A stretch of 64,000 bases of DNA from Macrostomum lignano (GCA_002269645.1 NIVC01000212.1:612850-676849), one strand, 5' to 3'; shown: positions 12,947 through 64,000, numbered from the stretch's first letter. Notes: generated by a model not told the origin, from the sequence alone. Program-made: numbers and translations.

Positions 12947-22032
<9,086 letters not shown>

Positions 22033-23419: not shown

Positions 23420-26400
23420 ATGTCGGACTTCATCAACTGTTTGATCGTATCTGAGGAGGATTTGCTGTGCAACGGCACCGAGTATCACCTTGCGGATCAC
23501 AAGGCCACGCCAGAGGATGCATTGTTCTGGATTTACTTGGCCATTTATGCTCTGCTGGTGCTCGGAGCTGGTAAGTTCCGAGTCTGATTGAGTCTGTTTC
23601 GTTTTTCATTTTTTCAGTTTCTCTATAGAAGTATTGTACTCGTATAATATGCGTCTACGTCATATAATGAGATACTGATTGACCTTCGAGCATCTGACCT
23701 AACCTATCTTTGAGCATCTGACCTAACCTGTCTTTTAGCATCTGACCTAACCTGTCTTTGAGCATCTGACCTAACCTGTCTTTGAGCATCTGACCTAACC
23801 TATCTTTGAGCATCTGACCTAACCTGTCTTTGAGCATCTGACCTAACCTGTCTTTGAGCATCTGACCTAACCTGTCTTTGAGCATCTGACCTAACCTGTC
23901 TTTCAGCATCTGACCTAACCTGTCTTTGAGCATCTGACCTAACCTGTCTTTCAGCATCTGACCTAACCTGTCTTTGAGCATCTGACCTAACCTGTCTTTC
24001 AGCATCTGACCTAACCTGTATTTAAGCATCTGACCTAACCTGTCTTTTAGCATCTGACCTAACCTGTCTTTGAGCATCTGACCTAACCTGTCTTTGAGCA
24101 TCTGACCTAACCTATCTTTGAGCATCTGACCTAACCTGTCTTTGAGCATCTGACCTAACCTGTCTTTGAGCATCTGACCTAACCTGTCTTTGAGCATCTG
24201 ACCTAACCTGTCTTTCAGCATCTGACCTAACCTGTCTTTCAGCATCTGACCTAACCTGTCTTTGAGCATCTGACCTAACCTGTCTTTCAGCATCTGACCT
24301 AACCTGTCTTTGAGCATCTGACCTAACCTGTCTTTGAGCATCTGACCTAACCTGTATTTAAGCATCTGACCTAACCTGTCTTTCAGCATCTGACCTAACC
24401 TGTCTTTCAGCATCTGACCTAACCTGTCTTTGAGCATCTGACCTAACCTGTCTTTGAGCATCTGACCTAACCTGTCTTTGAGCATCTGACCTAACCTGTC
24501 TTTGAGCATCTGACCTAACCTGTCTTTCAGCATCTGACCTAACCTGTCTTTGAGCATCTGACTTAACCTGTCTTTGAGCATCTGACCTAACCTGTCTTTG
24601 AGCATCTGACCTAACCTATCTTTGAGCATCTGACCTAACCTGTCTTTGAGCATCTGACCTAACCTGTATTTAAGCATCTGACCTAACCTGTCTCTTAGCA
24701 TCTGACCTAACCTGTATTTGAGCATCTGACCTAACCTGTCTTTCAGCATCTGACCTAACCTGTCTTTGAGCATCTGACCTAACCTGTCTTTGAGCATCTG
24801 ACCTAACCTGTCTTTCAGCATCTGACCTAACCTGTCTTTGAGCATCTGACCTAACCTGTCTTTGAGCATCTGACCTAACCTGTCTTTGAGCATCTGACCT
24901 AACCTGTCTTTGAGCATCTGACCTAACCTGTCTTTGAGCATCTGACCTAACCTGTCTTTCAGCATCTGACCTAACCTGTCTTTGAGCATCTGACCTAACC
25001 TGTCTTTCAGCATCTGACCTAACCTGTATTTAAGCATCTGACCTAACCTGTCTTTGAGCATCTGACCTAACCTGTCTTTCAGCATCTGGCCTAACCTGTC
25101 TTTGAGCATCTGACCTAACCTGTCTTTGAGCATCTGACCTAACCTGTCTTTGAGCATCTGACCTAACCTGTCTTTGAGCATCTGACCTAACCTGTCTTTG
25201 AGCATCTGACTTAACCTGTCTTTGAGCATCTGACCTAACCTGTCTTTGAGCATCTGACCTAACCTGTCTTTCAGCATCTGACCTAACCTGTCTTTGAGCA
25301 TCTGACCTAACCTGTCTTTGAGCATCTGACCTAACCTGTCTTTGAGCATCTGACCTAACCTGTCTTTGAGCATCTGACCTAACCTGTCTTTGAGCATCTG
25401 ACCTAACCTGTATTTAAGCATCTGACCTAACCTGTCTCTTAGCATCTGACCTAACCTGTATTTGAGCATCTGACCTAACCTGTCTCTTAGCATCTGACCT
25501 AACCTGTCTTTGAGCATCTGACCCAAACTGTCTTTGAGCATCTGAAATAACCTGTCCTTGAGCATCTGACCTAACCTGTCTTTGAGCATCTGACCTGTTT
25601 TTGCTCATTCTAGCTATCTTAGAACATGTGCCTAAACTTATCTTTGAGTATTTCACCACTTGTCATGAACTGTCTTTGAGCGTTTGAACTACGCCAAGTA
25701 CATAAAGCGCTCTCGACTCTGAAACAAGGAAGAGGTCTCTTAGTACTCTCACTGGTAACCCATATGCTTTTGCAACTCTCTTACCTGCAACCGAACACCC
25801 AAACACAGGCCTAATGAGCGGCCTAACCATAGGCCTGTTGAGTCTCGACCTGCTCAGCTTAAAAGTGCTCAGCGATTCTGGCACAGGCGAGACGAAACGT
25901 TTTGCCAAGCGTCTGTTCCCCATCATCAGACAGCATCACTGGCTGCTGGTGACTCTGTTGCTAGGCAACGCGGCTTGCGTTGAAGCAATGCCGATATTTT
26001 TAGATCGGGTTTCCGATCCAGTGACCGCCATCCTTGTCTCCGTTACGGCTGTACTGTTTTTTGGAGAGTGAGTTTCGCTTTCTATTTTTGCTACTGCCAG
26101 TAGTTATATATTGTTAAAATATCAAAGCGTAGGAAATTTGTCGACTTTTTCAGAGTCATTCCGCAAGCTCTGTGCACCAGATACGGATTGAAGATCGGGT
26201 ACTATTGCTCTCCGTGAGTTGAACGTGTCTATGCGCTTGCCTTTTACACTCTGCATGTGACAGCCAGGTACATGTAGTGTTTTTTGACACTTTTGCACAA
26301 AGATTTTCATAAAACTTGTACATTCGCAGGCCATGAAGGGCCAATCCCAAAAGCAACGGATGTGTTCATGTCTGACGATCTTAAAGTCAAGGTTAGGGTT

Positions 26401-41512: not shown

Positions 41513-43239
41513 AGCGATTTCGGCATGAGAATACTCAACTGAGTTTATCTCTGTTCCTCTCCTCGTCCTTCTTTGGACTTGCTGTCAGATTGAGTTCTGA
41601 CCCATTCGTCTATAAGACGAATCCCTGCCGGTCCGCGGTCTGTTACCGCCAAGTTATCCTTAGCTCCCCAAGTGAGCTCGCCTATCGGCCAGCGGTCTGA
41701 TACCGCCCAGCATCATCAGCATCGCCTGATCTACATCAGCGCCTCGTTGCTTCAGCGCATCGCCGCTTCACCGTCTGCCTGACTGCAGCCTACAGCCGCC
41801 CTCGGTCACTCCGCCGCTCTCTCTCTCTGTGCAGCTGCCGGTAAGTTCCTGTTACTAATTTGTGCTCTAATTACCTTTGCTTATCCGGGGTTTGCCTATT
41901 TTCCATTGTCTGATTAGAGAGCTGAGCCAATTGTGATACCGTACTTTTTGCTGTATTTTACTCAATAGTGAAGCCGCCTAATTGCCTGATTATTTGCCTA
42001 AGGGCCTAATTATTAACTATTAATTAATCCCATCATTATTCACTCTTTCACCATCATTTCACTCATGGCTTGCTAAGCCTTTCTCCCGGGGTGGCAAAGC
42101 ATAAGGAAGTTTTGGTAAGCTAATGGCCTCTCCCCGTGCACAGCCCGCCTGTGAGTGCGTGCTGCGGGGCCGCGTGTGCGTGCAGTAGAGGGATTAGCGA
42201 GTCTTGGCACAGAATGGCAGTAGGAAGGTTGCAACCCCATGCTGACGCGTCCCTTCGCCTTGAGCAATCTAAACTATAGACAGTACATGTTCGTCTCATA
42301 CTACTCTTAGTAATCGAAGTCGCAAGTTAGCCTCGCTCACAGCCACAAAGGATCCCCTGCTGAGAAATCCTCCTGATTGAGCCCAGAGTTCCCGATCATG
42401 CCCCAAGCAGAGTCCCTGTACTCGGCTGCATGTGTTTCCCCTGTTAGCCTAAATCTCCTGGTAACCATCCCAGGCGGGGCTCTAGCCTCGAGAGGTCTGG
42501 TAGAAAGATCCAGGTGCGCCAGGTCACATAGAGTGGTGGCAGCCACTCGGTCATACGATGACCGAGTGACCAACTATTGCACCTTGGCTACAGGTGGGGT
42601 CCATGTGGGTCCTTGGCCCTCTGGTCACAAAGCGCTACCAAAGCTATCAATCATGTGGGCGGGACAGTCTGGTGCTGGAGGTCCGTCAGGCCATTGCCCG
42701 GTCATAGGCAGCCTACGGTCATTGCCCCCTCTAGTCATGCGTTCGTCTCTCTACGGAGCGGACAGGCGACAAGGGCGGTTACATCAGTACCTTTTTTCAG
42801 CTATAGCCCTCAGCCCCACTGCGGCAGGCCCAAAGAAATTGACCTGACGAGTTTCGCGCCTTGACCGTGCGGGCGGATTTTATGGCCCCCATACAGTGCG
42901 TCTAAGATGGCTTTCGTGTATAATAAATGCATTAGTCTGGACATGGGGATGGCATGCAGTATTACCTGCCTCCTTACTGTGACAGCTCATATTGATTTTT
43001 TCTAGGCTACATCCAGCTGCTTTAGAACTGCTCTGCGACTTTAAGACCCTCCCTGCTCACTACCTCCCATGTAGTGAGCGGAGATAATCAGTAGCGTAAC
43101 TCCGCTACCATAGACAAAGACATCCGTGCCATACATGGCTAGCGGAGATAAGGCCTTATATTCGGGTCGCACATGCATGCCGTGGATTACATACAAAGAA
43201 TCGCCTGATACGAAGAGATATCAGGCGATTCTTGTTTAT

Positions 43240-44770
43240 CTCTCCCCACTGCTCCCATCTCTACCCCACTGCTCCCATCTCTCCCCACTGTCTCCCATCT
43301 CTCCCCCACTGCTCCCATCTCTCCCCACTGCTCCCATCTCTCCCCACTGTCTCCCATCTCTACCCCACTGCTCCCATCTCTCCCCACTGTCTCCCATCTC
43401 TCCCCCACTGCTCCCATCTCTCCCCACTGTCTCCCATCTCTCCCCCACTGCTCCCATCTCTACCCCACTGCTCCCATCTCTCCCCACTGTCTCCCATCTC
43501 TCCCCCACTGCTCCCATCTCTCCCCACTGTCTCCCATCTCTCCCCCACTGCTCCCATCTCTCCCCACTGCTCCCATCTCTCCCCACTGTCTCCCATCTCT
43601 ACCCCACTGCTCCCATCTCTCCCCACTGTCTCCCATCTCTCCCCCACTGCTCCCATCTCTCCCCACTGTCTCCCATCTCTCCCCCACTGCTCCCATCTCT
43701 ACCCCACTGCTCCCATCTCTCCCCACTGTCTCCCATCTCTCCCCCACTGCTCCCATCTCTCCCCCACTGCTCCCATCTCTCCCCCACTGCTCCCATCTCT
43801 CCCCACTGCTCCCATCTCTCCCCACTGCTCCCATCTCCCCCCACTGTTCCCATCTCTCCCCACTGCTCCCATCTCTCCCCACTGCTCCCATCTCTCCCCA
43901 CTGTCTCCCATCTCTCCCCCACTGCTCCCATCTCTCCCCACTGCTCCCATCTCTCCCCCACTGCCTCCCGTCTCTCCCCCACTCCCTCCCATCTCCCCCA
44001 CTGCCTCCCATCTCTCCCCACTGCTCCCATCTCTCCCCCACTGCTTTCATCTCTACCCCACTGCTCCCATCTCTCCCCACTGTCTCCCATCTCTCCCCAC
44101 TGCTCCCATCTCCCCCACTGCCTCCCGTCTCTCCCCCACTGCCTCTCATCTCTCCCCCACTGCTCCCATCTCTCCCCCACTGCCTCCCATCTCCCCCACT
44201 GCCTCCCATCTCTCCCCACTGCTCCCATCTCTACCCCCACTGCTCCCATCTCTACCCCACTGCTCCCATCTCTCCCCACTGTCTCCCATCTCTCCCCCAC
44301 TGCTCCCATCTCTCCCCCCACTCCCTCTCATCTCTCCCCCACTGCCTCCCGTCTCTCCCCCCACTCCCTCCCGTCTCTCCCCCACTGCCTCCCGTCTCTC
44401 CCCCACTCCCTCCCGTCTCTCCCCCACTGCCTCCCGTCTCTCCCCCACTCCCTCTCATCTCTCCCCCACTGCCTCCCATCTCTCCCCCACTGCCTCCCGT
44501 CTCTCCCCTACTGCCTCTCATCTCTCCCCAGTGCTCCCATCTCTTCCACTGCCTCCCATCTCTCCCCACTGTCTCCCATCTCTCCCCCACTGCTCCCATC
44601 TCTTTCCCACTGCTCCCATCTGTCCCACACTGCCTCCCATATCTCCCTACTACCTCCCATTTCTCCCCCACTGCCTCCCGTCTGTCCCCCACTGCCTCTC
44701 ATCTCTCCCCCACTGCTTCCCGTCTCTCCCCCACTCCCTCTCCTCTCCCCACTGCCTCCCATCTCTCTCC
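43240..44770 (+). repeat. 19-20 bp C-rich minisatellite (ctcccatctctccccactg)
   Basis: Visible directly. Explains all ORFs in 43126-44826. Confidence 0.95.
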
Positions 44771-48310: not shown

Positions 48311-49004
48311 TACTTTCTTATCAACCCTCATGCAGCAATTTGATGTAATTCTATTACCCTATTACGAACCTATTTTGGAGCAAATGCTTCGCGTGTTGAG
48401 AAAATCAACTGAAGGAGCAGAGCCTCACGCCCCCCAAAATACAATGAATTACTTTTTATTTATGGGCGTTAGGGGAAAACGGGGCGTGCGATGCTCTTAA
48501 TGCTATAAGCCCCCTCCCTGGCTTGTGCCGGCAAAGAATTCTCATTTCCTCTTTTCTCCCATTTCTCCCCCCCCTCGACGTCCCTCGCTCTCCTCCTTCC
48601 TTCTACCCATTCTGCGCTCCGCGGCGGCCCCTGAACAGTAATTTCCTACTCTCCCTAAGTCTATAAAAACAGGCCGTGGCCATATTTGGTCCGGCTCAGC
48701 CAATCGGGCGGCCCCCTGCTGCAGGTCCAGTGTACAAGCGCAGCGTCATAGCTCGTGTTTAGCCTTGCAACCCTATGAGTGTACGCGCGCAGCTCTTTAA
48801 CAAGACGTCGATGACAATCGGCTCTTGGCCAACTCCTCTCCCTGCATGTCTGTCTGTCTGTCCGCTTCTCTCCCCCTCCCTCACCGCGCTCACTTCCTGG
48901 ACTGGTTAACCCTTAATATACAGCATTGCTAGTGAGCCAGTTTGGCTTGGGAGTAGCCAACTCCTTTTGTTCGATATTTGAGCAGCATCCTTACGGACAC
49001 AGAA

Positions 49005-51581
49005 ATGCAACTTCTATCATTGCTGCCACTACTGCAGCTGTTTCTGCTTAATCAGCTCACCAGTGGCTTTGCTGACCAACCGGGGGTGACATGCGTTTGC
49101 CAGACTCGACCGAGTGCTCAAGCAGCTCGAGAGTTGTCCTGTCACAACTGGAGTCCGGCTTTGAACTTCGGCCTCGGCCAGCAGCAGCAGCAGCAGCAGC
49201 TGACGGGGCCGACCTTCGTCTGTCGGGGCTACGAGCTGTCCGCGCCAGGTTTCAACATCGAAGCCATCGAAGGTGAACTCGGCCTCGGCTTGAAAATCGG
49301 ACCGGCGCTGATGAAGCTGGACCTCAGCTCCAACCAGTTGTCCCTGCTCGACCAGCCTCACTTTGCCTCGCTGCCGAACCTGCACCGGCTTGAGCTGGGC
49401 TCCAACCAGATCAGGTTGATCTCGCACCGGCTGTTTGACGGTCTCAAGCAGCTCATCTTTCTGGACTTGGACAACAACCAGCTGCCTGAAGTTACTCAGG
49501 CCACATTCGGGTCTCAGCGAGTGTTCAGCCCTGGCAACCAGTGCAACCTGCGCTCCCTGCTCTACCTCTACTTGGCTAACAATCGTATCGAACGCGTCGA
49601 TCCCAACAGTTTTGATTGCATGTCGCGGCTCAAAGTGCTCAACTTGCAGCGCAATCTAATTAAGGTGCTGCCGGAATCCACCTTCTCCGGTCTCAGCTCC
49701 ATCACTAGCCTGAAACTGTATGCTAACCGCATTGACACGGTGCGGGACTCCGCATTCAGCCAGTGCTGCCGGGAGCTGAGATACCTCAGCTTAGTTGACA
49801 ATCGAATCTCCCATCTGTCGCGTACAATTTTCAACTTCATGGGCAATTTGACTTCGCTCTACCTAGACCGGAACCAATTCGTCCAGGTGCCAACCTACCT
49901 GCTGGCCTACGCAGCCGGCCTCGGGCCAGCCAGCCTCTCCGACGTCCATATTCAGCGCAACCACATCGTGCGCATCCGGAAGAACGACTTCCGGGACGCT
50001 GGAAAGATCGACGCTCTGAACTTGTTCGATAACAGCATCCAGCGCATCGAGGACTACAGCTTCGCCAGCCTGTCCTGGACAAGAAGCCTCATCCTACAGA
50101 AGAACGAACTTCGCACAATTAACAACCGAACGCTAGCTGGCTTGTCCAACCTTCGCTATCTGGTACTCACGCAGAATCACATCGAATTCGTGGAAGACTA
50201 CGCGTTCACTCCGCTGGTCCGCTTGGACACTCTTTCAATAGCGTCGAATCGTCTTACGGAAGTTCGTCAGCTAATGTTCGTCGGACTAAATCACACCTTC
50301 TCGTTGAACCTGGCGTCCAACTATATCCAATCGCTGCGCGGGGACGAGTTCCAGCTGTTGCCGAGCCTGCGCTATCTGTACCTGGAGAAAAATCAGCTGA
50401 TGCGAATCAGGCGCGGCTACTTTTCGGGTCTCACCGGTCTGCGCAAGTTGGACCTCAGCGACAATCGCTTGAACGAGCTGGAGACTCAAGCCTTTGCCGA
50501 TCTCGATGAGCTAGCCTTTCTTGACCTCAGTGGAAACAACTTGGAGACCATTTGCTCCGCCAGTCTTCAGGGCCTACGGAGCCTGCAGTCTTTGTTCCTA
50601 TCGAAGAACCGTATCGATGCACTGGACCCAACACTGCTAGCCAGTCTTCCCGCGTTGAGCGTGCTCGACCTTCGAGACAACCGCCTGGCCGAATTCTCCA
50701 TCAACTGGCCGCTGCCATCCGCCGCAGTGGCCAAAGCTCGTCCTGGCCAGGCGCTGACCCACCTCGACCTCGGCGGGAACAGACTTCGTCTGACCGACAC
50801 CGACGGTTGCGGCTTCTGCGGCCTCGACTCGGTCCGTTTCGCCAGCCTGGGCGTCGAGCTGAGCAGCGTCGCTCAGCTGACTGCCGACAGTCTGCGTGGC
50901 CTCGGTGGGCCCGGGCTCGACCTCATCATCAACGAGAAACAGTGGCCACCGGCAGCAACGGCCGCTGCGGCCTCCACGGCAGCCGAGTGTCGAGTCGCTT
51001 GCAAATCGCGGCAGCAGCTGCAGCAGCTACCGAAGGAGCTGACCGACAGAGCCTGCCGGTCTAGACTCAGCCAAGGTCGAAGCAACGTCGCTGGCGCCGC
51101 GGACGCCACCTTCGGCACCGCAGCTGCAGGCGGCGGCAGCTTCGCTCGCCTGATGCTCTACGTGTCTCTGCCGGCCCTGCTGCTGCTGATCCTGGCCGTG
51201 GCCTCCGTCAGCGGATTCTATCTGATGGCACGTCGTCGTCGACGTCAGCGAAGCGCCGCCGCAACAAGAGCAGCGGCAGCGGCGTCTGGTGGTTACCATG
51301 TCGACCAGCAGCAGTTGCAGCATCTGGGCATGCAGAGCGTGCTGGGCCAGCAGCAGCAACAGCTTGCTGGGCCTCCACTGTTGCCGCAGTCTCAGTCGCA
51401 GCAGCACCTGCAGATGCGAAATCACGGTCATCACCAGCATCACCATCGTCAGCAGCAGCCGCAGCCTGGAATGTCAGCCTACGACACTGAGCCAAGCCTA
51501 CTGGAGATGAGCATGGAGCTGACGCCATCAAATTCCGACGTGAAGTTCAATAGCAAAGTGTATGGCAATTTGCTTTCGTGA
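49005..51581 (+). CDS. Intronless type-I membrane leucine-rich-repeat protein (about 19-20 LRRs, no TIR), 858 aa from the first ATG
   Basis: Signal peptide MQLLSLLPLLQLFLL, a Cys-containing N-cap, tandem LxxLxLxxNxL repeats, TM LMLYVSLPALLLLILAVASVSGFYLMA followed by RRRRR, and a Gln/His-rich tail. Confidence 0.92.
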   Translation: MQLLSLLPLLQLFLLNQLTSGFADQPGVTCVCQTRPSAQAARELSCHNWSPALNFGLGQQQQQQQLTGPTFVCRGYELSAPGFNIEAIEGELGLGLKIGPALMKLDLSSNQLSLLDQPHFASLPNLHRLELGSNQIRLISHRLFDGLKQLIFLDLDNNQLPEVTQATFGSQRVFSPGNQCNLRSLLYLYLANNRIERVDPNSFDCMSRLKVLNLQRNLIKVLPESTFSGLSSITSLKLYANRIDTVRDSAFSQCCRELRYLSLVDNRISHLSRTIFNFMGNLTSLYLDRNQFVQVPTYLLAYAAGLGPASLSDVHIQRNHIVRIRKNDFRDAGKIDALNLFDNSIQRIEDYSFASLSWTRSLILQKNELRTINNRTLAGLSNLRYLVLTQNHIEFVEDYAFTPLVRLDTLSIASNRLTEVRQLMFVGLNHTFSLNLASNYIQSLRGDEFQLLPSLRYLYLEKNQLMRIRRGYFSGLTGLRKLDLSDNRLNELETQAFADLDELAFLDLSGNNLETICSASLQGLRSLQSLFLSKNRIDALDPTLLASLPALSVLDLRDNRLAEFSINWPLPSAAVAKARPGQALTHLDLGGNRLRLTDTDGCGFCGLDSVRFASLGVELSSVAQLTADSLRGLGGPGLDLIINEKQWPPAATAAAASTAAECRVACKSRQQLQQLPKELTDRACRSRLSQGRSNVAGAADATFGTAAAGGGSFARLMLYVSLPALLLLILAVASVSGFYLMARRRRRQRSAAATRAAAAASGGYHVDQQQLQHLGMQSVLGQQQQQLAGPPLLPQSQSQQHLQMRNHGHHQHHHRQQQPQPGMSAYDTEPSLLEMSMELTPSNSDVKFNSKVYGNLLS

Positions 51582-53081
51582 AATAGTTTGATTTCTTCGT
51601 GTCAAATAAGTGAAATTTGGCAAAAACTGCTTCGTACTTTTACTTTTTAATCCAATCCAATGCTAAATTATTGTAATTAGCATCTTGCATCTTCTCTTCT
51701 CTTGCCACTAAGTTTGATCTAACTTGTTTCTCTCACGACACACAGTTGTTTTTTATTTTACGCAAAATAGTTCAGCAAAACCTGCTTCACCCGTTGAAAA
51801 TGGTACCGTGACAAAAACCACTGGAGTCTCATCGCAATTACAACTTGCTAGCGTCTCTAGGACGACTCTTGTGACTCGAGCGTCTCTGCAATGGGACGGG
51901 GAGGCGGCTGTTGAATCACGAGCGCATCAAGTGAGTTGCAGAATCGTAAAAGAGTTGCGAAAAAAGTCATCCAAAAATCGTTGTTTTAGCGCTTAACCTT
52001 CTACTAATTTAAGTAGACTAAATGGATATAACCCCAGAGTCACTTACGTCGCTTCAGAGAAGAAAATAAGACGCCTCAAATTTACTCTTGGGCGACTCTT
52101 GAACGACTTTTTGGCGACTTGTGCCGTGAAATCTCATCGGTTTAGAGTCGTCTAGAGAGTCACTTCTTTCCTGTTTCTATTGTGTCCTTGGGTCAAGACG
52201 TGACACTTGAAAAAGCATTAGCGAGATAGAAAATCAAGCATTTTTAAGCACTTAATGAAGGATTTCTAATATGTGGATCACAAAAAGGATGTTTAACCTA
52301 CCCACCAATGTCAAAGGCATAACATTGTAGCTTAGCTTAAGCTCTAAGCACCCTTTTCTTATTTGATTTTTCTAAACATGTTTCTTATCGTCATAAGATC
52401 ATGTTAAAGACCCAGTTGATGTAATCTGCTTCTTTTTTTAAGAAAAAGTCCGTTTCAGAATGCGCCCTCCTCCTGCTTTTGCCTGCTTGCTGGCAGGATA
52501 CGTCCCAATGCACTGCATCTTCTATTGGTCCTCTTGCTGGCCTAATTGACAGGGTTGGTAAAGAAATCAAGGACTTATTACCTCACCAGAACCAATCATC
52601 TTTCCAGTTGGAAAGTCTGCAAGCCTAATTATTATTTAATAAGACTCATTAATTTCGTCTGCCAGTTTGGTTTTTCACCATTACTTGCTGTACAATTGTG
52701 ATTTTTTTGTTAAAATGGCTTTATTCTGCATAAATTACATGTACCGTATAACACACGATTGACCCCTGTCTATTTGTAAAAGTTATACAATGCCTACATA
52801 TACTGCCTAATCATTTTCCCCCATATTTTGGAATAAGTATGCAAAAAGCAATGCTTAACTATATAAATGCTGTTCGTTGAAATCCTGTGTAAATTTTTTT
52901 TTGTTATTTAATTATTGTTAAAGAAATAATCAAGTCTAATTGATCTGAGGGTTAGACTTTAACAAAAAAACAGGTAAATGAGCCCTGTGGCTAAATTATT
53001 GCATATATATTAAATTAAATCGATGTTCTCTCTCTCCAACTCTCTAACTCATCAACGCCTCACGCACATCAACCCCACCCC

Positions 53082-54115
53082 AACACGTCCGATCCTGTCT
53101 CCCATCGCAGCCCGAGGACTTTTGACGATACGCCATCTTCGCCCAAGGAGGCGGCTGAATAGCTGGAGGGGTCCTCCGTGATGTCCTTTGTCACCGCCGA
53201 CAACGCCGGAGCAAGAACATCACTGTCTAGTGTGCTGGCGCGAACCGCTTTCAATACATTCTTGCTGTTGGACTGCCAGTGTCGCAGATTCATTCCAGCC
53301 TGTTGGAATATGTGCCGGGATTTTTGGATGAGATCCAGGGCCTGCTGTTCATCCACGCACCCAGAGATCAGGTTGTCCACATAGATTTCTTTGGACACCT
53401 TATCCACGAACTCTGCATGCTGGCCTCGGTGAGATGCCAAGTGGTGTTGAATGACAGTCTCCAGGACGGCAGGTGAGCAGGTGAGTCCGAACACCAGAGC
53501 AGCGTAGCGCAGAACAACGAGAGGTGAATCAGCTTGACTGGGATCCCGTGGCCAGAGGAATCGTAGAGCATCGCGATCGTCTTCTGCAATTCGGATCTGC
53601 AAAAAAGCCTTCTCAATATCGGCAGTCAAGGCGATCGGATGAAGTCGAAAGGCCTGAAGCAGTCGCGGAATCTCGGCCAACGAACAGGTTCCTGTTTCCA
53701 GACAGTCATTCAGCGATGGACTGCACTGATCTCGCTTGGCACTCGCGTCGAAAACCACTCGAACTTTGGTCGATTCAGCTTCAGGACGGATTACGGCTCG
53801 GTGGGGTAGGTAGTGGATGAGATCGCTGGTCCCATCTGGAGCTTCTTCGACTACGCCAGCTTCCTTCTGACTGGTCAGAATGCGGTGGTACTCCTGAAGT
53901 AGCGCAGGCTCACGACGCAGCCTCGTCAGATTGGTCTTTAGTCTCTTGAACGCTACCTCGAAGTTGTCGGGCAATCTTAATTCCTTTTTGGGAATCTTCC
54001 ACGGCAGCTGAACTGAGTAGCGACCCTCTTGGAACTGGGCATTCAGAGTCAGTGGACGCTGATCAGGCTCGGCTGCACTTCTGATGCCGAGACCTTCTAA
54101 AGTCCAGAACGCCTC
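53082..54115 (-). CDS. BEL/Pao pol fragment: reverse transcriptase (inverted)
   Basis: EAFWTLEGLG..GRYSVQLPWK..LPDNF, HYLPHRAVIRPEAESTKVRVVFDASA, DIEKAFLQI, FGLTCSP, YVDNL, KVLGLRW are BEL/Pao RT motifs. Confidence 0.92.
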
Positions 54116-56486
54116 GTGTTCGTGCTGCAGTTTTCTCCGCCAGAAGATTTGCTCAAGGCGTCGCCCTCCAAGCGTGTCGTGCTACAGCTGCTGGCCCGTG
54201 TCTACGATCCTCTGGGCTTCCTGGTTCCGCTGCTTACGTTGCCGAAATCGATGTTCCAGAAGCTGTGCGTTGAAAAGATCGCTTGGGACTGCCCGCTAAA
54301 GGAGCCGATTAAGCAGCAGTGGCTGAAGTGGTTGCAGGAGATGCTGGCAGGTCGATTTCAAGTTCCAAGGTTGGTGCTTTCGGCGACGAAGGAGGTCGAG
54401 GAGATACAGCTGCATGGGTTCTGTGATGCGTCAATCAAATGCTATGCGGCGTGTCTTTACCTGCGAGTGCAGTACACCGATAGTTCCGTCAGCTGCAACC
54501 TGGTGGCCGCCAAGGCGAGAGTGGCTCCACTGTCGGTTCTTTCAATTCCTCGGCTCGAACTCCTGGGTGCCTTGATACTCGCCAGACTGTTGACATCATC
54601 CATGAGTCAGTATCCTCATGTTCGCCAGGTGTTTTGCTGGACAGACAGTGCCGACACGCTCTACTGGATCCGGCAGCACAGACCCTGGAAGCTCTTTGTT
54701 CATAATCGGGTGACGGAGATCCGCCGCCTGGTGCCAGAGGATGCCTGGAGACATGTCCCAGGCGAGGAGAATCCGGCGGACGTTGCATCTCGAGGAACAT
54801 CAGCGAGCAAGTTGAAGGCGGACGACAGCTGGTGGCACGGTCCAGACTGGCTGGCACGACCTCCTGACGATTGGCCCGACCAATCCTTTCTCAGCTTACC
54901 GACAGCGGCAGTTGCCGAGGAGCAAAAGACACAAGTGAACCGTCCAGTTGTTCTGCTAACTGAAGCCGGTCCTGACATCAGTCTACAGGAAGTTCTCAAT
55001 GACACGAACTTCTCATCCTGGATCAAGCTGATTCGGGTGACAGCCTATGTCCTACGCTTCGTCAGAAACCTGCAAGCTAGAACTTCTGCAGCGGGGGAGG
55101 AGCGAGTGGGACCACTGGCTGCAGCAGAAGTCCTTGAAGCTGAAGAGCGCTGGCTGCGAGAAGTGCAGAAACGGAGTTTTCAAGCCGAAATTGCTCACAT
55201 TCAGGAGTCAGCGGCCAGTACAGATCTCAGCAGGCAGTTGAATCTTTTTCTCGACAACAAGAGTATTCTCCGAAGCCAAGGTCGATTGAAGGAGTCCAAC
55301 GCCTCTGCCGAGGTTGACTGTCCGATTCTGATCCGAGCAAGTCACACCTGGAGCTTCTTCTCATCTGGGACGCTCACGCCAAGGTTCTGCACGGGGAGTG
55401 CCCAGCACTCTTTGTAAGCTGCGAGAGAGATTCTGGCTAATCAGAGGAAGACAGCGAGTCAAGTCGATCCTGAGAAGTTGCTTTGTCTGCAGACGTCTTC
55501 AAGGACTACCATATGCAGTGAAGCAAATCCCAGCCTTACCTGAAGCACGCGTGAAGTCTGGGAGAGCCTTTGAGTGGTGCGGACTCGACTACTGCGGACC
55601 TGTCAAACTGATGGAGGACACAGAGATCGAGAAAGGCTATATCCTGGTTTTCACCTGTGCGGCCACGCGAGCCCTTCACCTGGAACTGGTGAGCGACTTG
55701 ACGACCGAGACCTTCCTGCGAGCCCTCCGACGGTTCTGTGCTCGGAGAGGAATTCCCAATCTCATCAGTGACAACGCCAAGACATTCACCAAGGCTGCCA
55801 AAATACTTCAGGCGTCGGAGAGTCGACAAGTTCAAGACTTCTGCGCCACCAGGAAAATCACCTGGCAATTCATCGTCGAACGCGCACCGTGGCAAGGAGG
55901 CTTCTGGGAGCGACTGATGAGGGACATCAAGCTGGCTTTGCGCAAGACCATCCTCAACGCAACCCTGACGCTGGACGAACTGCGGACAGTGCTAATGGAG
56001 GTGGAAGCGGTGCTCAACAGTCGGCCTCTACTCTACGTGGATGCCGAAACCAACGGAGAAGTCCTGACGCCGGCGCACTTTCTGGTCCTGCAACGGCTGA
56101 CGGCGGAGCCAACTTCTAGCGGTACGCCCGAGCTCCTGCTGCCGTTGCCAACACTGCTGAGGCGAATGCGCGCCAGACTGCAAGCCTTCTGGGACTGCTG
56201 GGAGCGACAGTATCTGACCAGCCTGCGAGAACATAATCTAAGTCCCAAGCATGGCGTAACTCGAGAAGCGACGGCCGGCGACATCGTCCTGGTGAAAGGT
56301 GAGGCCGGGCAGCCGAGGCTTACCTGGTGTACCGGTGTCATCGAGTCGGTGCATCCTGGCCGAGACGGGGCGGTGAGATCTGCAACGGTTCGAGTCGCGC
56401 CCAGACCTGGCCGCGGTCCCAGGAGATGCTTGATTCGCCGACCGGTGGAGAACCTGATTTTGCTGGAAGCTGTGAAAACTGAATGA
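54116..56486 (+). CDS. BEL/Pao pol fragment: RNase H (Pao peptidase A17 region) plus integrase, with two apparent 1-nt deletions near 55343-55390
   Basis: SKRVVLQLLARVYDPLG, LHGFCDAS, AKARVAPL..IPRLELLGA, WTDS, NPADVASRG, the zinc-binding H..H..CFVC motif, GLDYCGP, SDNAKTF, PWQGGFWERL, LNSRPL, LTPAHFL. Confidence 0.92.
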
Positions 56487-57444
56487 ACTTAAGTAACTGA
56501 CTTTCAATGACTGTTCTAATCGTTGTTTCGAGTTTCTGTTTAGTTTTAGTTCGCAGTAATTTTCACTCCCTTTCAATCTTACCTTTTGAGCTCCTTAGCG
56601 CTGATTGGATTTTTTTGAGTTTCGTTTTCCCTTTGTTCCTACTTTTTCGTTAACTCAGTACTCTGGTGATGGTGTGTCACATTTTTAGTCATCAAGTCTG
56701 TTGTAATGTTGGAGCGTTTTTTGTTGTTCATTTGTTTTTTGCTATTCGTTTCGTTTAATTTCATTTAAGTTAATAGCGAGTTTCTTTTTCGAATATCAAT
56801 GTTAAGTACTGTAATGATGAAGCATCATTAGGGGGAGTGTATTGGATTTGGAGTGCCTGCGTACCGACCCTCTGCTATGTGTAGCGTCGCCAGTGTACAC
56901 TTGGCGGTCCCCGTCTCAGAGTGTGTTGGGGTGGGGTTGATGTGCGTGAGGCGTTGATGAGTTAGAGAGTTGGAGAGAGAGAACATCGATTTAATTTAAT
57001 ATATAAGCAATAATTTAGCCACAGGGCTCATTTACCTGTTTTTTTGTTAAAGTCTAACCCTCAGATTTATTAGACTTAATTATTTCTTTAACAATTATTA
57101 ATCACGATTCTATTCGCCATTGAGATGCCAATTAAAGTACATAAAAATTCATTGAATTGGGTGAATTTAAATTTTGAGATTGGTCTTGCTTTCTGCTTTT
57201 TTATGTCAAAAAGCTGACTGGTTGTTTGAGTTCAATTGCAACTACGAATTAAAAAACATTTTTGAGTATTTTGCAATGCATTCTACTATTAAAGAACTGA
57301 TTCAGTAAGAATGTCTGAACCAAAAAAGCAAAAGAAATAAAAAGCCGGTTAGTATGCGACACTCACTCTTGACGCTTTTGCAAAAGCCCCGGAAAGCAGT
57401 TTGGACAAACTGAAAGCGTTTCTGACAACTGGTGGAACTTTGGT

Positions 57445-58255
57445 CGAACCGGAAGCAAGTTGGTGGAACCGGAAGCAAGTTGGTGGAACCGGAAGCAAGT
57501 TGGTTTGGAACCGGAAGCAAGTTAGTTTGGAACCGGAAGCAAGTTGGTAGAACCGGAAGCAAGTTGGTAGAACCGGAAGCAAGTTGGTAGAACCGGAAGC
57601 AAGTTGGTAGAACCGGAAGCAAGTTGGTAGAACCGGAAGCAAGTTGGTTTGGAACCGGAAGCAAGTTGATTTGGAACCGGAAGCAAGTTGGTAGAACCGG
57701 AAGCAAGTTGGTTTGGAACCGGAAGCAAGTTGGTTTGGAACCGGAAGCAAGTTGATTTGGAACCGGAAGCAAGTTGGTAGAACCGGAAGCAAGTTGGTGG
57801 AACCGGAAGCAAGTTGGTGGAACCGGAAGCAAGTTGGTGGAACCGGAAGCAAGTTGGTGAAACTGGAAGCAAGTTGGTGGAACCGGAAGCAAGTTGGTGG
57901 AACCGGAAGCAAGTTGGTGGAACCGGAAGCAAGTTGGTGGAACCGGAAGCAAGTTGGTGGAACCGGAAGCAAGTTGGTGGAACCGGAAGCAAGTTGGTTT
58001 GGAACCGGAAGCAAGTTAGTTTGGAACCGGAAGCAAGTTGGTAGAACCGGAAGCAAGTTGGTAGAACCGGAAGCAAGTTGGTAGAACCGGAAGCAAGTTG
58101 GTAGAACCGGAAGCAAGTTGGTAGAACCGGAAGCAAGTTGGTTTGGAACCGGAAGCAAGTTGATTTGGAACCGGAAGCAAGTTGGTAGAACCGGAAGCAA
58201 GTTGGTAGAACCGGAAGCAAGTTGGCCAAACCGGAAGTTAGCTGAACCGGAACCG
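57445..58255 (+). repeat. 20/22-bp minisatellite (gaaccggaagcaagttggtg)
   Basis: Visible tandem units. Confidence 0.95.
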
Positions 58256-58749
58256 GAAGGGGGCCTCTGTCACCCTCAATGTAAAGAGGACTTCTTGGTT
58301 TTTTACATAAAGTTTCTTTCTTAAGCGAATACCGGACCTTGCGCTTCATCAAAGCAACAAATGAAAGTTTATTACTAAGAGCTATTCGAGCTTTTATTTA
58401 ATGAGAATTATTCGTTATAAAAATATTTATTTCTCATTCGGCAACTATCTGCTAAAAACAAAATTTCAATTGAATTCTTTAAAGAATTAAATCCTAAACA
58501 GCATATTATATACTACTGCTGGGACACACGGCCTTGCTGAAATTTCCTGCAGTGATCATTTGAGCAAGAGCGAGTAAGTTACCTTTATAATCTAGTATTT
58601 AAAAAATGAAAATCTTATACTACATGTAAAAATGGTTTTTCGGTAGGTATATGATCGATTTCAGAAAAAATGGCTCAACCGATTTTCTTCAAGCTTGCAC
58701 CATTCGATCAGAAACTCTTGTTTCGCTATATAACTCATAGTTTATCTTC

Positions 58750-59199: not shown

Positions 59200-60737
<1,538 letters not shown>

Positions 60738-62416: not shown

Positions 62417-63645
62417 ATGGATCCACTATTTCAAGCTTTGAGCCTTTTTCGCCGAAGAAAATATGAAAAATGCATTGAAAAATGCACAGAAATACTAGAC
62501 AAGAATTCGTATGATGAGGTAATTAGTACAAATTGATCTTTTTCACTAAAAGTTTCTTCCAATTCCATTGAGGTAGTTCGTCAATTCTGAGAAATGCACA
62601 ATTTTTTTATTAACTGTGAGTATGATGCAAATTTTGCGTGTTGCTGTTATTGATTAAAATGCATGCTTTAGTTATAATTTAAAACCATATGATTTTACAC
62701 CATTGTAACAAAAATATTAAAAAGTGGCATCTAGAATTTATTGCTTTTTGTAGACAAATGATACAGAATATATACAAGTTAATTTACTCTTTTAATTCAA
62801 AATTATTTGTATAAAACAGGATAAAGTATACACAAAATATTTTTATTAATTTAAGGTCTTAATATTGCATTATATCAGACTGCTATTTACCTTCTATTAT
62901 AAAATTGGCAAAAAATGCAATTTTAATTTTGTCTAAATTGATAATAAAATAACCTCCATAATCTATTTTCTTTCTCATTCTTTTCTACAGAAAACCACTA
63001 TAGTTTTAAACTTGTTAATAAAGATTCACATATACAATGACGTACACTTCCAGTAGTATAGAGCGCATTTTAAAAAAAGAGAATTTCATTGCATAAATTT
63101 AAAACAGGCCGCTTGGCTTCTGAAGATGCAGGCCCTCACCGAGCAGGTCTACGTTGACGATATTGAAAATGACGAGGACGGCATGGCCGAGGGCCTCCTG
63201 GACGACTCCGCCATCGCTTCTGTGGCCCGGCCGGGCACCTCACTGAGGTTGCCACCGCTGGCGGCGGCTCTGGAGGCCTGCAGCAGGCGATGCGGCCGTC
63301 CACTCAGTCTGGCCGGCCCGTCACCGGCTTCGTCAGGCCCGGCACGCAGGGCTCCGGGGCCGGCTCGCTGGAACAGGTCTGCCTGTGTCTGCCTGTGTGT
63401 CTGCCTGTGTGTCTGCCTGTGTGTCTGCCTGTGTGTCTGCCTTTGTGTCTGCCCGTGTGTCTGCCTGTGTGTCTGCCTGTGTGTCTGCCTTTGTGTCTGC
63501 CTTTGTGTCTGCCTGTGTGTCTGCCTGTGTGTCTGCCTGTGTGTCTACCTGTGTGTCTGCCTGTGTGTCTGCCTGTCTGTCTGTCTGCCTGTCTGTTTTA
63601 GTGTCTGTCTGTCTGTCTGTCTGTCTGTCTGCCTGTCTGTCTTAG

Positions 63646-63682
<37 letters not shown>

Positions 63683-64000
63683 GCCTGTCTGCCTGTCTGC
63701 CTGTCTGACTGACTGTCTGTCTTAGTGTCTGTCTGTCTGTCTGTCTTAGTGTCTGTCTTAGTGTCTGTCTGTCTGTGTGTCTGTCTGTCTGTCTGTCTGT
63801 CTGTCTGCCTGTCTGCCTGTCTGCCTGTCTGTGTTATTAGCCTGTCCATAAGCCTGTGCCCGCACTTCACTCATGAATACCCTAACCCTTCCCCATCAAA
63901 CCCTCTCTCAGGCTCTGAAGACGCCTCGAACCGCGTCGAACGCTCGCCCAGTGACGTCATCATCTGGCCGGCTGGTCCGTCTTGGCACAGCCTCCATGCT
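62417..64000 (+). CDS. TTC8: TTC8/BBS8 BBSome subunit, 5' part (continues past the window)
   Basis: Exons 62417-62518 (MDPLFQALSLFRRRKYEKC..YDE), 63108-63376 (AAWLLK..ALTEQVYVDDIE..RPGTSLRLP; RPSTQSGRPVTGFVRPGTQ; 269 nt, so 1 nt is missing at about 63252) and 63912-64000 (ALKTPRTASNARPVTSSSGRLVRLGTASM). Confidence 0.93.
63377..63835 (+). repeat. (GTCT)n/(gtctgcctgtgt)n repeat starting at the BBS8 splice donor
   Basis: Visible directly. Confidence 0.9.

What the first reader, a model, noticed from the sequence alone, without database searches (positions are those of the whole stretch)
52916..57093. BEL/Pao element with two identical-type LTR ends and an inverted RT half, inserted with a clean 5-bp TSD (a twin-priming-like LTR product)
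Seen: the order is reverse complement of the last 171 bp of the LTR, reverse complement of RT, then RNase H-integrase, PPT and a full 256-bp LTR. The unit has TG and CA ends and ATTAT on both sides. The inverted RT piece ends exactly where the forward piece begins (native ..TGSDV|FVLQF..). Gag, protease, PBS and the U3-side terminus are absent. Established: BEL/Pao integrases make about 5-bp TSDs, and 5' inversion by twin priming is described for L1, whereas normal proviruses have direct LTRs. Inference: two minus-strand cDNAs were made, one extending normally from the 3' LTR and one switching to an internal pol site. They were then joined into a linear DNA with two 3'(U5)-type ends that integrase still accepted. 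This would show an LTR element converted into a TIR-flanked unit, and that two U5 ends suffice for integration.
Basis: partly seen in the sequence, partly recalled or inferred. Interest (0 to 1): 0.88.

Follow-up and report, generated by a model that had tools for sequence, protein, structure and literature searches.

The report
Rearranged retrotransposon with two inverted ends
A dead BEL/Pao retrotransposon copy in a flatworm gene intron has its reverse-transcriptase half flipped and the same (U5-type) LTR terminus at both ends, yet carries a clean 5-bp target duplication, so it looks like one integrase-made insertion of a botched reverse-transcription product: a rare curiosity seen once and not yet checked in reads.

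Summary
The unit 52916-57093 consists of:
- an inverted partial LTR (last 171 of 256 bp);
- an inverted pol segment (post-protease linker plus RT, 343 open codons);
- a forward pol segment (RNase H-like PF05380, integrase, DUF5641);
- a 3' UTR, a PPT (AGGGGGAG) and a full LTR.

It has TG/CA ends and ATTAT on both sides (chance about 0.002). Gag, protease and PBS are absent.

Alignment to nine BEL/Pao pols shows that the inverted piece ends in the column just before the one where the forward piece starts. This is the geometry of an L1 5' inversion.

New here: the first five bases of the forward piece (GTGTT) equal LTR positions 86-90, where the left arm begins. That gives a 5-nt microhomology at the pol-to-LTR junction.

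The best reading is two minus-strand cDNAs made on one RNA, one of them mis-transferred to an internal pol site. This yielded DNA with two U5 ends that integrase inserted in one event.

The host is a Macrostomum flatworm, and the site is an intron of a chaoptin-like LRR gene.

Not testable here: read support, an empty site, the family's native sequence, and the U3/R boundary. None of 56 other BEL/Pao loci showed the rearrangement.

It is a new variant of known defective retroelement products, of moderate interest.

The parts
52911..52915 (.). Left copy of the 5-bp target-site duplication (ATTAT)
   Evidence: Read directly. The chance of a 5-mer match in these flanks is about 0.002.
52916..53086 (-). 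Inverted partial LTR: positions 86-256 of the 256-bp LTR, with the U5-type terminus (reads TG on the + strand) facing outward
   Evidence: Inverted repeat with 56923-57093, 167 of 171 identical.
53087..54115 (-). Inverted pol segment: post-protease linker plus reverse transcriptase up to the RT/RNase H connection. 343 codons, no stops, no frameshifts.
   Evidence: RVT_1 hit. Aligns to P0149 residues about 665-1008 at 56% identity. End alignments. Break counts.
54116..56486 (+). Forward pol segment: RNase H-like region (Pfam PF05380), integrase (H2C2, rve) and DUF5641, through the stop codon. Broken by two frameshifts, no in-frame stops.
   Evidence: Pfam hits. P0149 about 1009-1804 at 54-66% identity. 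Break counts. The first five bases, GTGTT, equal LTR 86-90.
56487..56829 (+). 3' untranslated region between the pol stop and the PPT
   Evidence: No ORF or homology. Contains a small 18-bp repeat.
56830..56837 (+). Polypurine tract AGGGGGAG
   Evidence: Read directly. The same GGGGGAG|TGTA.TGGA motif precedes the LTR in the related contig L001.
56838..57093 (+). Complete 256-bp LTR (TGT...ACA)
   Evidence: Start inferred from the PPT and TG and from conservation in L001. End defined by the inverted repeat and the TSD.
57094..57098 (.). Right copy of the target-site duplication (ATTAT)
   Evidence: Read directly.
49038..51161 (+). Context: upstream exon of the host chaoptin-like LRR gene. The next matching exon starts near 57428, so the unit lies in an intron.
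   Evidence: tblastn of P0121: 98% identity over residues 1-708, with later residues matching 57428-58259, 59236-59610 and 63108 onward. LRR_8 Pfam hits.

Best explanation
This is a dead-on-arrival derivative of a BEL/Pao LTR retrotransposon, made in one round of faulty reverse transcription and inserted once by the element's DDE integrase.

Shown:
- The unit has the same LTR terminus (the one next to which a PBS would normally sit, i.e. the U5 end) in inverted orientation at both ends.
- It is bounded by a 5-bp duplication.
- Its pol is split at one point. The upstream 1029 bp lie on the opposite strand, fused directly to LTR position 86. The downstream part continues normally into the PPT and a full LTR.
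- The pol-to-LTR fusion sits in a 5-nt microhomology (GTGTT).

Inferred mechanism:
1. Two tRNA-primed minus-strand DNAs were made in one particle.
2. cDNA A transferred normally to the 3' end of the RNA and copied LTR, PPT, IN and RNase H.
3. cDNA B had been copied as far as LTR position 86. This is either the end of strong-stop DNA, if 86 is the RNA 5' end, or a point in U3 after a normal first jump. Its 3' end annealed to GUGUU inside pol on the same RNA, and it copied the RT region.
This is why the two pieces abut.
5. The two 3' ends were then joined head to head. Either each cDNA copied the other, or host end-joining did it. The result was a duplex whose two termini are both U5 ends.
6. 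Integrase inserted this duplex with the usual staggered cut.

The product lacks gag, protease, PBS and a U3-side terminus, and both LTR pieces point outward. It cannot go through another LTR-type replication cycle. Its only likely effects are as an intronic insertion with outward-facing LTR sequences.
For: - Inverted arms and termini.
- TSD with chance about 0.002.
- Domain content and strands.
- Codon-level abutment against nine relatives: and tblastn.
- No filler at the head-to-head junction. The minus-strand reading begins two residues before the conserved FW motif, and the residue before that does not fit the family pattern.
- GTGTT at 54116-54120 equals LTR 86-90.
- The coding sequence is almost intact (0 stops, 2 frameshifts in the forward part, none in the inverted part), so the rearrangement is not the debris of long decay.
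- No PBS, gag or protease anywhere in the window.
- 0 of 56 other BEL/Pao loci holding both RT and IN have them on opposite strands, so this is not a normal family architecture.
- Precedents for the component errors: HIV-1 proviruses with deletions running from upstream sequence into U3/R of the 3' LTR, and proviruses with inversions (PMC9278108); integrase complexes that bind two U5 ends (PMC3623958).
Against: - Only one copy exists in the data, and no sequencing reads could be inspected.
- No empty allele or homeolog could be retrieved.
- No same-family full-length copy was found. The best relative is 56% identical at protein level. The native breakpoints are therefore known only to the codon, and the microhomology reading rests on the best relatives.
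- The U3/R boundary of this LTR is unknown. A TCAG Inr-like motif lies at LTR 79-82, but a TATA-like TATATAAG lies further downstream at 164-171.
- The two arms differ at 4 of 171 positions. This requires either post-insertion change or two non-identical source RNAs.
- Whether a BEL/Pao integrase accepts two U5 ends in vivo has not been shown independently.
Confidence: 0.6

Rival explanations
1. Same aberrant cDNAs, but joined after integration. Two separate incomplete cDNA molecules each contributed one U5 end to a single concerted (bimolecular) integration at ATTAT. Host end-joining then ligated their free internal ends, creating the head-to-head junction at 54115/54116.
For: It gives the same final structure and TSD. 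The head-to-head junction shows no recognisable retained microhomology, as blunt end-joining would give. From my own knowledge, not from a paper read here: two-donor products are the usual outcome of concerted integration assays in vitro.
Against: It still needs the two-cDNAs-on-one-RNA step to explain the exact abutment. It also requires that a chromosome break with two dangling cDNAs be repaired without any loss or filler. Nothing in the sequence separates it from the main model.
Confidence: 0.2
2. Assembly artefact: a chimeric join of reads from different copies of the family in a highly repetitive, partly polyploid genome.
For: The window is crowded with minisatellites and repeats. The host genome type (Macrostomum) is notoriously repeat-rich. 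No reads were available.
Against: - The structure is not a simple fold-back palindrome. Only 171 bp are duplicated, and they are 3.8 kb apart.
- The arms differ at 4 sites.
- A chimera of two loci would not give matching ATTAT flanks at exact LTR termini.
- The same-point split of pol, with a microhomology at the second junction, is not what overlap-based mis-joins produce.
- There is no other copy of the family in the window to be confused with.
Confidence: 0.08
3. Two independent insertions in opposite orientation, one of them internally deleted, later fused by a deletion. Alternatively, a post-integration inversion or deletion within one normal provirus.
For: Nested and adjacent TE insertions with later deletions are very common. 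One metagenome contig (L049) shows gag and RT of BEL/Pao elements head to head.
Against: - It needs three deletions.
- It needs one truncation point to coincide, to the codon, with the deletion endpoint of the other copy (roughly 1 in 1000).
- It needs unrelated flanks to carry the same 5-mer at exact termini (about 0.002).
- A rearrangement inside a normal provirus cannot place the U5 terminus of the LTR exactly against the left duplication.
- The near-intact coding sequence argues against a long history of decay.
Confidence: 0.07

Closest known systems
5'-inverted L1 insertions made by twin priming (non-LTR retrotransposons; Ostertag and Kazazian 2001, cited from my own knowledge)
   Same: The 5' segment is inverted relative to the 3' segment. 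The native 3' end of the inverted piece abuts the native 5' end of the forward piece. This is explained by two cDNAs primed on one RNA and joined at their 3' ends.
   Different: In L1 the primers are the two nicked target-DNA strands (target-primed reverse transcription), with a poly(A) tail and a variable 7-20 bp duplication. Here the second primer would be a tRNA-primed minus-strand DNA that carries LTR sequence. The ends are LTR termini (TG/CA), the duplication is 5 bp, and insertion is by a DDE integrase.
Defective retroviral proviruses with strand-transfer or template-switch errors (HIV-1 asymmetric LTRs and inversions, PMC9278108; mis-aligned strong-stop transfer in retroviral vectors, Pulsinelli and Temin 1991, cited from my own knowledge)
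   Same: A deletion junction joins internal sequence to a point inside U3/R of the LTR. Short homology is used for the switch. Internal inversions occur at a low rate.
   Different: Those proviruses keep two direct LTRs, with one U3 end and one U5 end. Here the U3-side terminus is missing and is replaced by a second, inverted U5 end.
Integrase complexes and concerted integration with two U5 ends in vitro (e.g. PMC3623958)
   Same: Two copies of the same (U5) viral DNA end are engaged by one integrase complex, and a staggered cut gives a short duplication.
   Different: Those are purified-protein systems with oligonucleotide ends. This would be a natural genomic record for a BEL/Pao element in an animal germ line.
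DIRS-type retrotransposons with inverted LTRs (PMC7192593, PMC3950715)
   Same: A retroelement flanked by inverted terminal repeats.
   Different: DIRS elements encode a tyrosine recombinase, make no target duplication, and have inverted repeats as their normal, functional architecture. This unit encodes a DDE integrase (rve), has a TSD, and its inverted ends are an accident that splits pol.
Canonical BEL/Pao elements (e.g. the gag-pol P0149 on contig L001; five BEL/Pao families reported in M. lignano, PMC12801592)
   Same: Pol domains (RVT_1, PF05380, rve, DUF5641), the PPT/LTR-start motif, a short LTR of about 260 bp, and TG..CA ends.
   Different: No gag, protease, PBS or 5' LTR. RT lies on the opposite strand. 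The ends are inverted, not direct.

Membership tests
BEL/Pao LTR retrotransposon (by descent) | Pol with RT followed by the PF05380 region and a DDE integrase, homologous to BEL/Pao polyproteins | tested here: met
   Pfam RVT_1, PF05380 (1.5e-47), rve, Integrase_H2C2 and DUF5641. 54-66% identity to the gag-pol P0149, which carries DUF1759/RVT_1/PF05380/rve/DUF5641.
BEL/Pao LTR retrotransposon (intact architecture) | Two direct LTRs, with a PBS after the 5' LTR and a PPT before the 3' LTR | tested here: not met
   The PPT and the 3' LTR are present. There is no 5' LTR. The other end is an inverted 171-bp LTR piece. No PBS is present.
BEL/Pao LTR retrotransposon (intact architecture) | Gag and aspartic protease upstream of RT, all on one strand | tested here: not met
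   No homology to residues 1 to about 660 of P0149 anywhere in the window. RT is on the minus strand and RNase H-IN on the plus strand.
BEL/Pao LTR retrotransposon | Short (4-6 bp) target-site duplication at TG..CA termini | tested here: met
   ATTAT on both sides of TG...CA, chance about 0.002. The expected length for the superfamily comes from my own knowledge (Wicker et al. 2007). A check on metagenome loci was inconclusive.
L1-type twin-priming 5' inversion | An inverted 5' segment whose native 3' end abuts the native 5' end of the forward segment | tested here: met
   Adjacent alignment columns against nine relatives. tblastn coordinates agree.
L1-type twin-priming 5' inversion | Hallmarks of target-primed reverse transcription: a 3' poly(A), a long variable TSD, an endonuclease-type target, and a non-LTR RT | tested here: not met
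   The ends are LTR termini with no poly(A). The TSD is 5 bp. The RT is of BEL/Pao type. So it works like twin priming but is not a member.
DIRS-like elements (inverted LTRs) | A tyrosine recombinase instead of a DDE integrase, and no TSD | tested here: not met
   The rve integrase core and H2C2 zinc domain are found. A TSD is present.
Minus-strand strong-stop mis-transfer product | The LTR portion fused to internal sequence equals exactly R-U5, so the junction lies at the transcription start | not testable with these tools
   The junction is at LTR 86. An Inr-like TCAG lies at 79-82 and a TATA-like motif at 164-171. No transcript 5'-end data are available for this family.

The most novel reading that the evidence does not exclude
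This would be a natural germ-line record that an LTR-retrotransposon integrase carried out a normal concerted integration on a DNA whose two termini are both U5 ends. That DNA would have been produced by a twin-priming-like event in which a second tRNA-primed minus-strand DNA mis-annealed inside pol. If so, 'U5-U5 inverted-end insertions' may be a general class of LTR-element products that standard LTR finders cannot see, because they require direct repeats.
Probability: 0.45. Interest if true: 0.65.

Novelty: new variant of a known kind. Interest (0 to 1): 0.55.

Why it matters
If real, this one locus records three things in a natural genome:
- Two minus-strand cDNAs in one particle can be resolved head to head. 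This is an LTR-element counterpart of L1 twin priming.
- A 5-nt match can misdirect a minus-strand transfer into pol.
- The U3 end is dispensable for a clean integrase-type insertion when a second U5 end is available.

There is also a practical consequence. Annotation pipelines that define LTR elements by direct repeats will misread such insertions as two fragments or as TIR elements, so their frequency is unknown.

For the host it is simply an intronic, non-autonomous insertion with outward-facing LTR sequence in a chaoptin-like gene.

Tried and rejected
Searches that did not give what was needed:
- Other copies of the family in the window: none. The flanks have no paralogous empty site either.
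- Close family members to map the breakpoints at nucleotide level: the word-indexed protein search gave at most 40% identity, the exhaustive representative search at most 56%, and the metagenome contig scan at most 48%. Only codon-level mapping was possible.
- Empty allele or homeolog through the host gene: the 98%-identical protein P0121 has no gene on record.
- TSD length in related full elements from metagenome contigs: the LTR pairs found had unclear boundaries and no clean duplications.
- Rfam found nothing in the window. The bacterial-type promoter/terminator scan of the LTR is irrelevant to a eukaryotic LTR and found nothing useful.
- Literature searches for integrase-type LTR elements with inverted LTRs returned only DIRS elements. 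A search for strong-stop, aberrant and inverted provirus returned nothing. The supplements of the M. lignano LTR paper are not held.

Mechanisms considered and rejected on geometry:
- Autointegration would put an LTR terminus, not LTR position 86, next to the pol breakpoint.
- Recombination between inverted copies gives colinear elements.
- A fold-back inverted duplication would duplicate adjacent sequence, not only the LTR piece.
- An inversion inside a normal provirus cannot place a U5 terminus against the left duplication.

An alternative reading of the junction, with the forward piece starting six bases earlier, was dropped. The closest relatives fit a start at 54116.


Full report
**1. 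What is there**

- **Inverted repeat.** The repeat finder reports one long inverted repeat in 52000-58000, with arms 52908-53086 and 56923-57101 (179 nt, 97%).
  - Read base by base, 171 nt of each arm lie inside a unit that begins TG at 52916 and ends CA at 57093.
  - The arms differ at 4 of these 171 positions.
  - The 8 further bases that the tool adds are flank. The AT-rich target is nearly its own reverse complement (7 of 8).
- **Duplication.** Immediately outside the unit, ATTAT occurs at 52911-52915 and at 57094-57098. With the base composition of these flanks, a 5-mer match at two fixed positions has a probability of 0.0016. Among all pairs of flank 5-mers the match rate is 0.0021.
- **Copy number.** No other copy of any part of the unit exists in the window.

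**2. Coding content**

- **Inverted segment.** The minus strand of 53087-54115 is one open frame of 343 codons. It hits Pfam RVT_1.
- **Forward segment.** The plus strand from 54116 to the stop at 56486 hits PF05380 ('Pao retrotransposon peptidase', 1.5e-47), Integrase_H2C2, rve and DUF5641. From my own knowledge, PF05380 is the region between RT and integrase that corresponds to RNase H.
- **State of the genes.** The forward pol part has two frameshifts and no in-frame stops. The inverted part has neither.
- **3' end.** After the stop come 343 bp without coding signal, then the polypurine tract AGGGGGAG (56830-56837), then TGTATTGG....
- **Closest relative.** An exhaustive profile-free search found P0149, an 1804-residue gag-pol. 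It is 56% identical over the RT piece and 54-66% over the rest.
  - Its contig, L001, shows GGGGGAG followed by TGTAGTGGA. It has an LTR of about 265 bp, followed by a PBS (TGGCGCCCGAACA) and then gag.
  - This supports the inferred LTR start at 56838 and the length of 256 bp.
- **Missing parts.** L001's PBS sequence has no match in the window even with two mismatches. Nothing in the window matches residues 1 to about 660 (gag, protease) of P0149 or of four other gag-pols.

**3. The geometry of the split**

- **tblastn mapping.**
  - With distant pols (P0025, P0006, P0062 and others), the minus-strand piece ends at the same residue, within two or three, where the plus-strand piece starts.
  - With the closer relatives the mapping is sharper. 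P0154 residue 970 falls on the last codon of the inverted piece (53087-53089), and residue 972 falls on 54119.
- **Multiple alignment.** Nine relatives were aligned with the two window pieces entered as separate rows. The inverted piece ends in the column immediately before the first column of the piece that starts at 54116.
- **Other end of the inverted piece.** The minus-strand reading from 54115 starts two residues before the conserved FW.LE..GI motif that follows the protease. The residue before that, which is encoded by the reverse complement of the forward piece, does not fit the family pattern.
- **Resulting order on the + strand.** The order is reverse complement of LTR 86-256, reverse complement of pol segment [a..b], pol from b+1 to the stop, UTR, PPT and LTR 1-256. 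There is no filler at either internal junction.
- This is the arrangement of a 5'-inverted L1 insertion, with an LTR piece attached to the b end of the inverted segment.

**4.

- The first five bases of the forward piece (GTGTT, 54116-54120) are identical to LTR positions 86-90. These are the innermost bases of the left arm, next to its junction with pol.
- The pol-to-LTR junction therefore sits in a 5-nt microhomology. A nascent minus-strand DNA that had been copied down to LTR position 86 ends in the complement of GTGTT, so it could anneal to that pentamer in pol RNA.
- This reading depends on placing the start of the forward piece at 54116, which the closest relatives support.

**5. Mechanism**

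*Shown:*
- One insertion site with a duplication.
- Two identical-type termini.
- One split point in pol.
- A microhomology at the second junction.
- Almost undecayed coding sequence.

*Inferred:*
- Two tRNA-primed minus-strand DNAs were made in one particle, which normally carries two RNAs, each with its own primer.
- One transferred normally and copied LTR, PPT, integrase and RNase H.
- The other mis-annealed through the pentamer inside pol of the same RNA and copied the RT region.
This explains the abutment.
- The two 3' ends were then joined head to head. The resulting duplex has a U5 terminus at each end, and integrase inserted it with its usual stagger.

*Open points:*
- I cannot tell whether LTR 86 is the transcription start. 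If it is, the left arm is strong-stop DNA. Otherwise it is a point in U3 reached after a normal first jump. An Inr-like TCAG lies at LTR 79-82 and a TATA-like TATATAAG at 164-171.
- I cannot tell whether the head-to-head joint was made before integration, by each cDNA copying the other. The alternative is joining afterwards: two molecules each give one U5 end to a bimolecular concerted integration, and host end-joining closes the middle.
- The two arms would descend from two different strong-stop DNAs, so they need not have been identical at insertion. Their 2.3% difference is therefore not a reliable clock.

**6. Rivals**

- **Two independent opposite insertions fused by deletions.** This needs three deletions, a codon-level coincidence of breakpoints and a chance duplication. 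Together this is of the order of 1e-5 or less.
- **Rearrangement of a normal provirus.** This cannot place a U5 terminus exactly against the left duplication. Autointegration, recombination between inverted copies, and fold-back duplication each predict different junctions.
- **Mis-assembly.** This cannot be excluded without reads. However, the structure is not a fold-back, the arms differ at four sites, the flanks carry a duplication, and there is no second copy nearby to be confused with.

**7. Rarity and precedents**

- Of 81 BEL/Pao loci fetched (80 metagenome contigs plus L001), 56 hold both RT and integrase. In none of these are the two on opposite strands.
- Full-text searches found no integrase-type LTR element with inverted LTRs. 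Only DIRS elements came up, and they use a tyrosine recombinase and make no duplication.
- The component errors are known from retroviruses:
  - HIV-1 proviruses have deletions running from upstream sequence into U3/R of the 3' LTR, and inversions occur in about 1-2% of proviruses (PMC9278108).
  - Integrase complexes bind two U5 DNA ends (PMC3623958).
- L1 twin priming and the mis-aligned strong-stop transfers described by Pulsinelli and Temin are cited from my own knowledge.

**8. Host and context**

- The 867-codon ORF upstream (48978-51581) is an LRR_8-rich, chaoptin-like protein.
  - It is 98% identical to an unnamed database protein, P0121.
  - It is 49-54% identical to Macrostomum lignano proteins.
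  - The window is therefore from a Macrostomum flatworm, most likely M. lignano. That species is reported to have five BEL/Pao families (PMC12801592).
- P0121 maps to 49038-51161, then 57428-58259, 59236-59610 and 63108 onward. The unit therefore lies in an intron, with its forward half in the gene's orientation.

**9. Verdict**

It remains an inference from one assembled copy.
- It is a new variant of known kinds of defective reverse-transcription products, not a new kind of element. Nothing suggests that it is mobile.
- Interest is moderate. It is a neat natural record for retroelement specialists and a reminder that direct-repeat-based LTR finders would miss such insertions.

Noticed in passing
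window 49038-51161, 57428-58259, 59236-59610, 63108-63998: A chaoptin-like LRR gene on the + strand, 98% identical to the unnamed protein P0121 and 49-54% to Macrostomum lignano proteins. The retroelement unit sits in its roughly 6.3-kb intron.
   Followed up: partly
window 57440-58237: A 20-bp minisatellite (about 39 copies, unit TTGGTGGAACCGGAAGCAAG) starts 350 bp to the right of the insertion. Its translation matches residues about 680-850 of P0121 at about 50% identity. Either it is a repeat-encoding exon, or the gene model reads through a minisatellite.
   Followed up: no
window 9170-48318 (many arrays), 16060-18774, 23684-25596, 43238-44767, 59680-60286, 63384-63834: The window is packed with minisatellite and microsatellite arrays with units of 4-139 bp. 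These include 2.7 kb of (TATC)n and 1.9 kb of a 24-mer. They explain the extreme GC-skew stretches and most of the long 'ORFs', including the spurious Pfam hits of 23655-25589.
   Followed up: partly
window 8372-8980: An ORF with an Ist1 domain (regulator of Vps4, 2e-24), probably an exon of a second host gene.
   Followed up: no
L001 1-95 and about 5853-5948; L001 181-460: The ends of the metagenome contig that encodes the closest gag-pol (P0149) overlap, so the contig is circularly permuted. This probably reflects LTR collapse in assembly, a tandem, or a 1-LTR circle. Its PBS, TGGCGCCCGAACA, lies within 2 nt of the LTR end, and gag starts only about 25 nt further on.
   Followed up: partly
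L049 59-1282 (-) and 2081-3337 (+): This is the only one of 81 BEL/Pao loci with hits on both strands: gag-protease on the minus strand and RT-RNase H on the plus strand, head to head and about 800 bp apart. The breakpoints do not abut, so it is probably two elements or a chimeric contig.
   Followed up: no
window 57006 / 53003: One of the four differences between the two LTR arms falls in the TATA-like motif: TATATAAG in the full LTR and TATATATG in the inverted arm. Two others are an adjacent dinucleotide change near the terminus.
   Followed up: no
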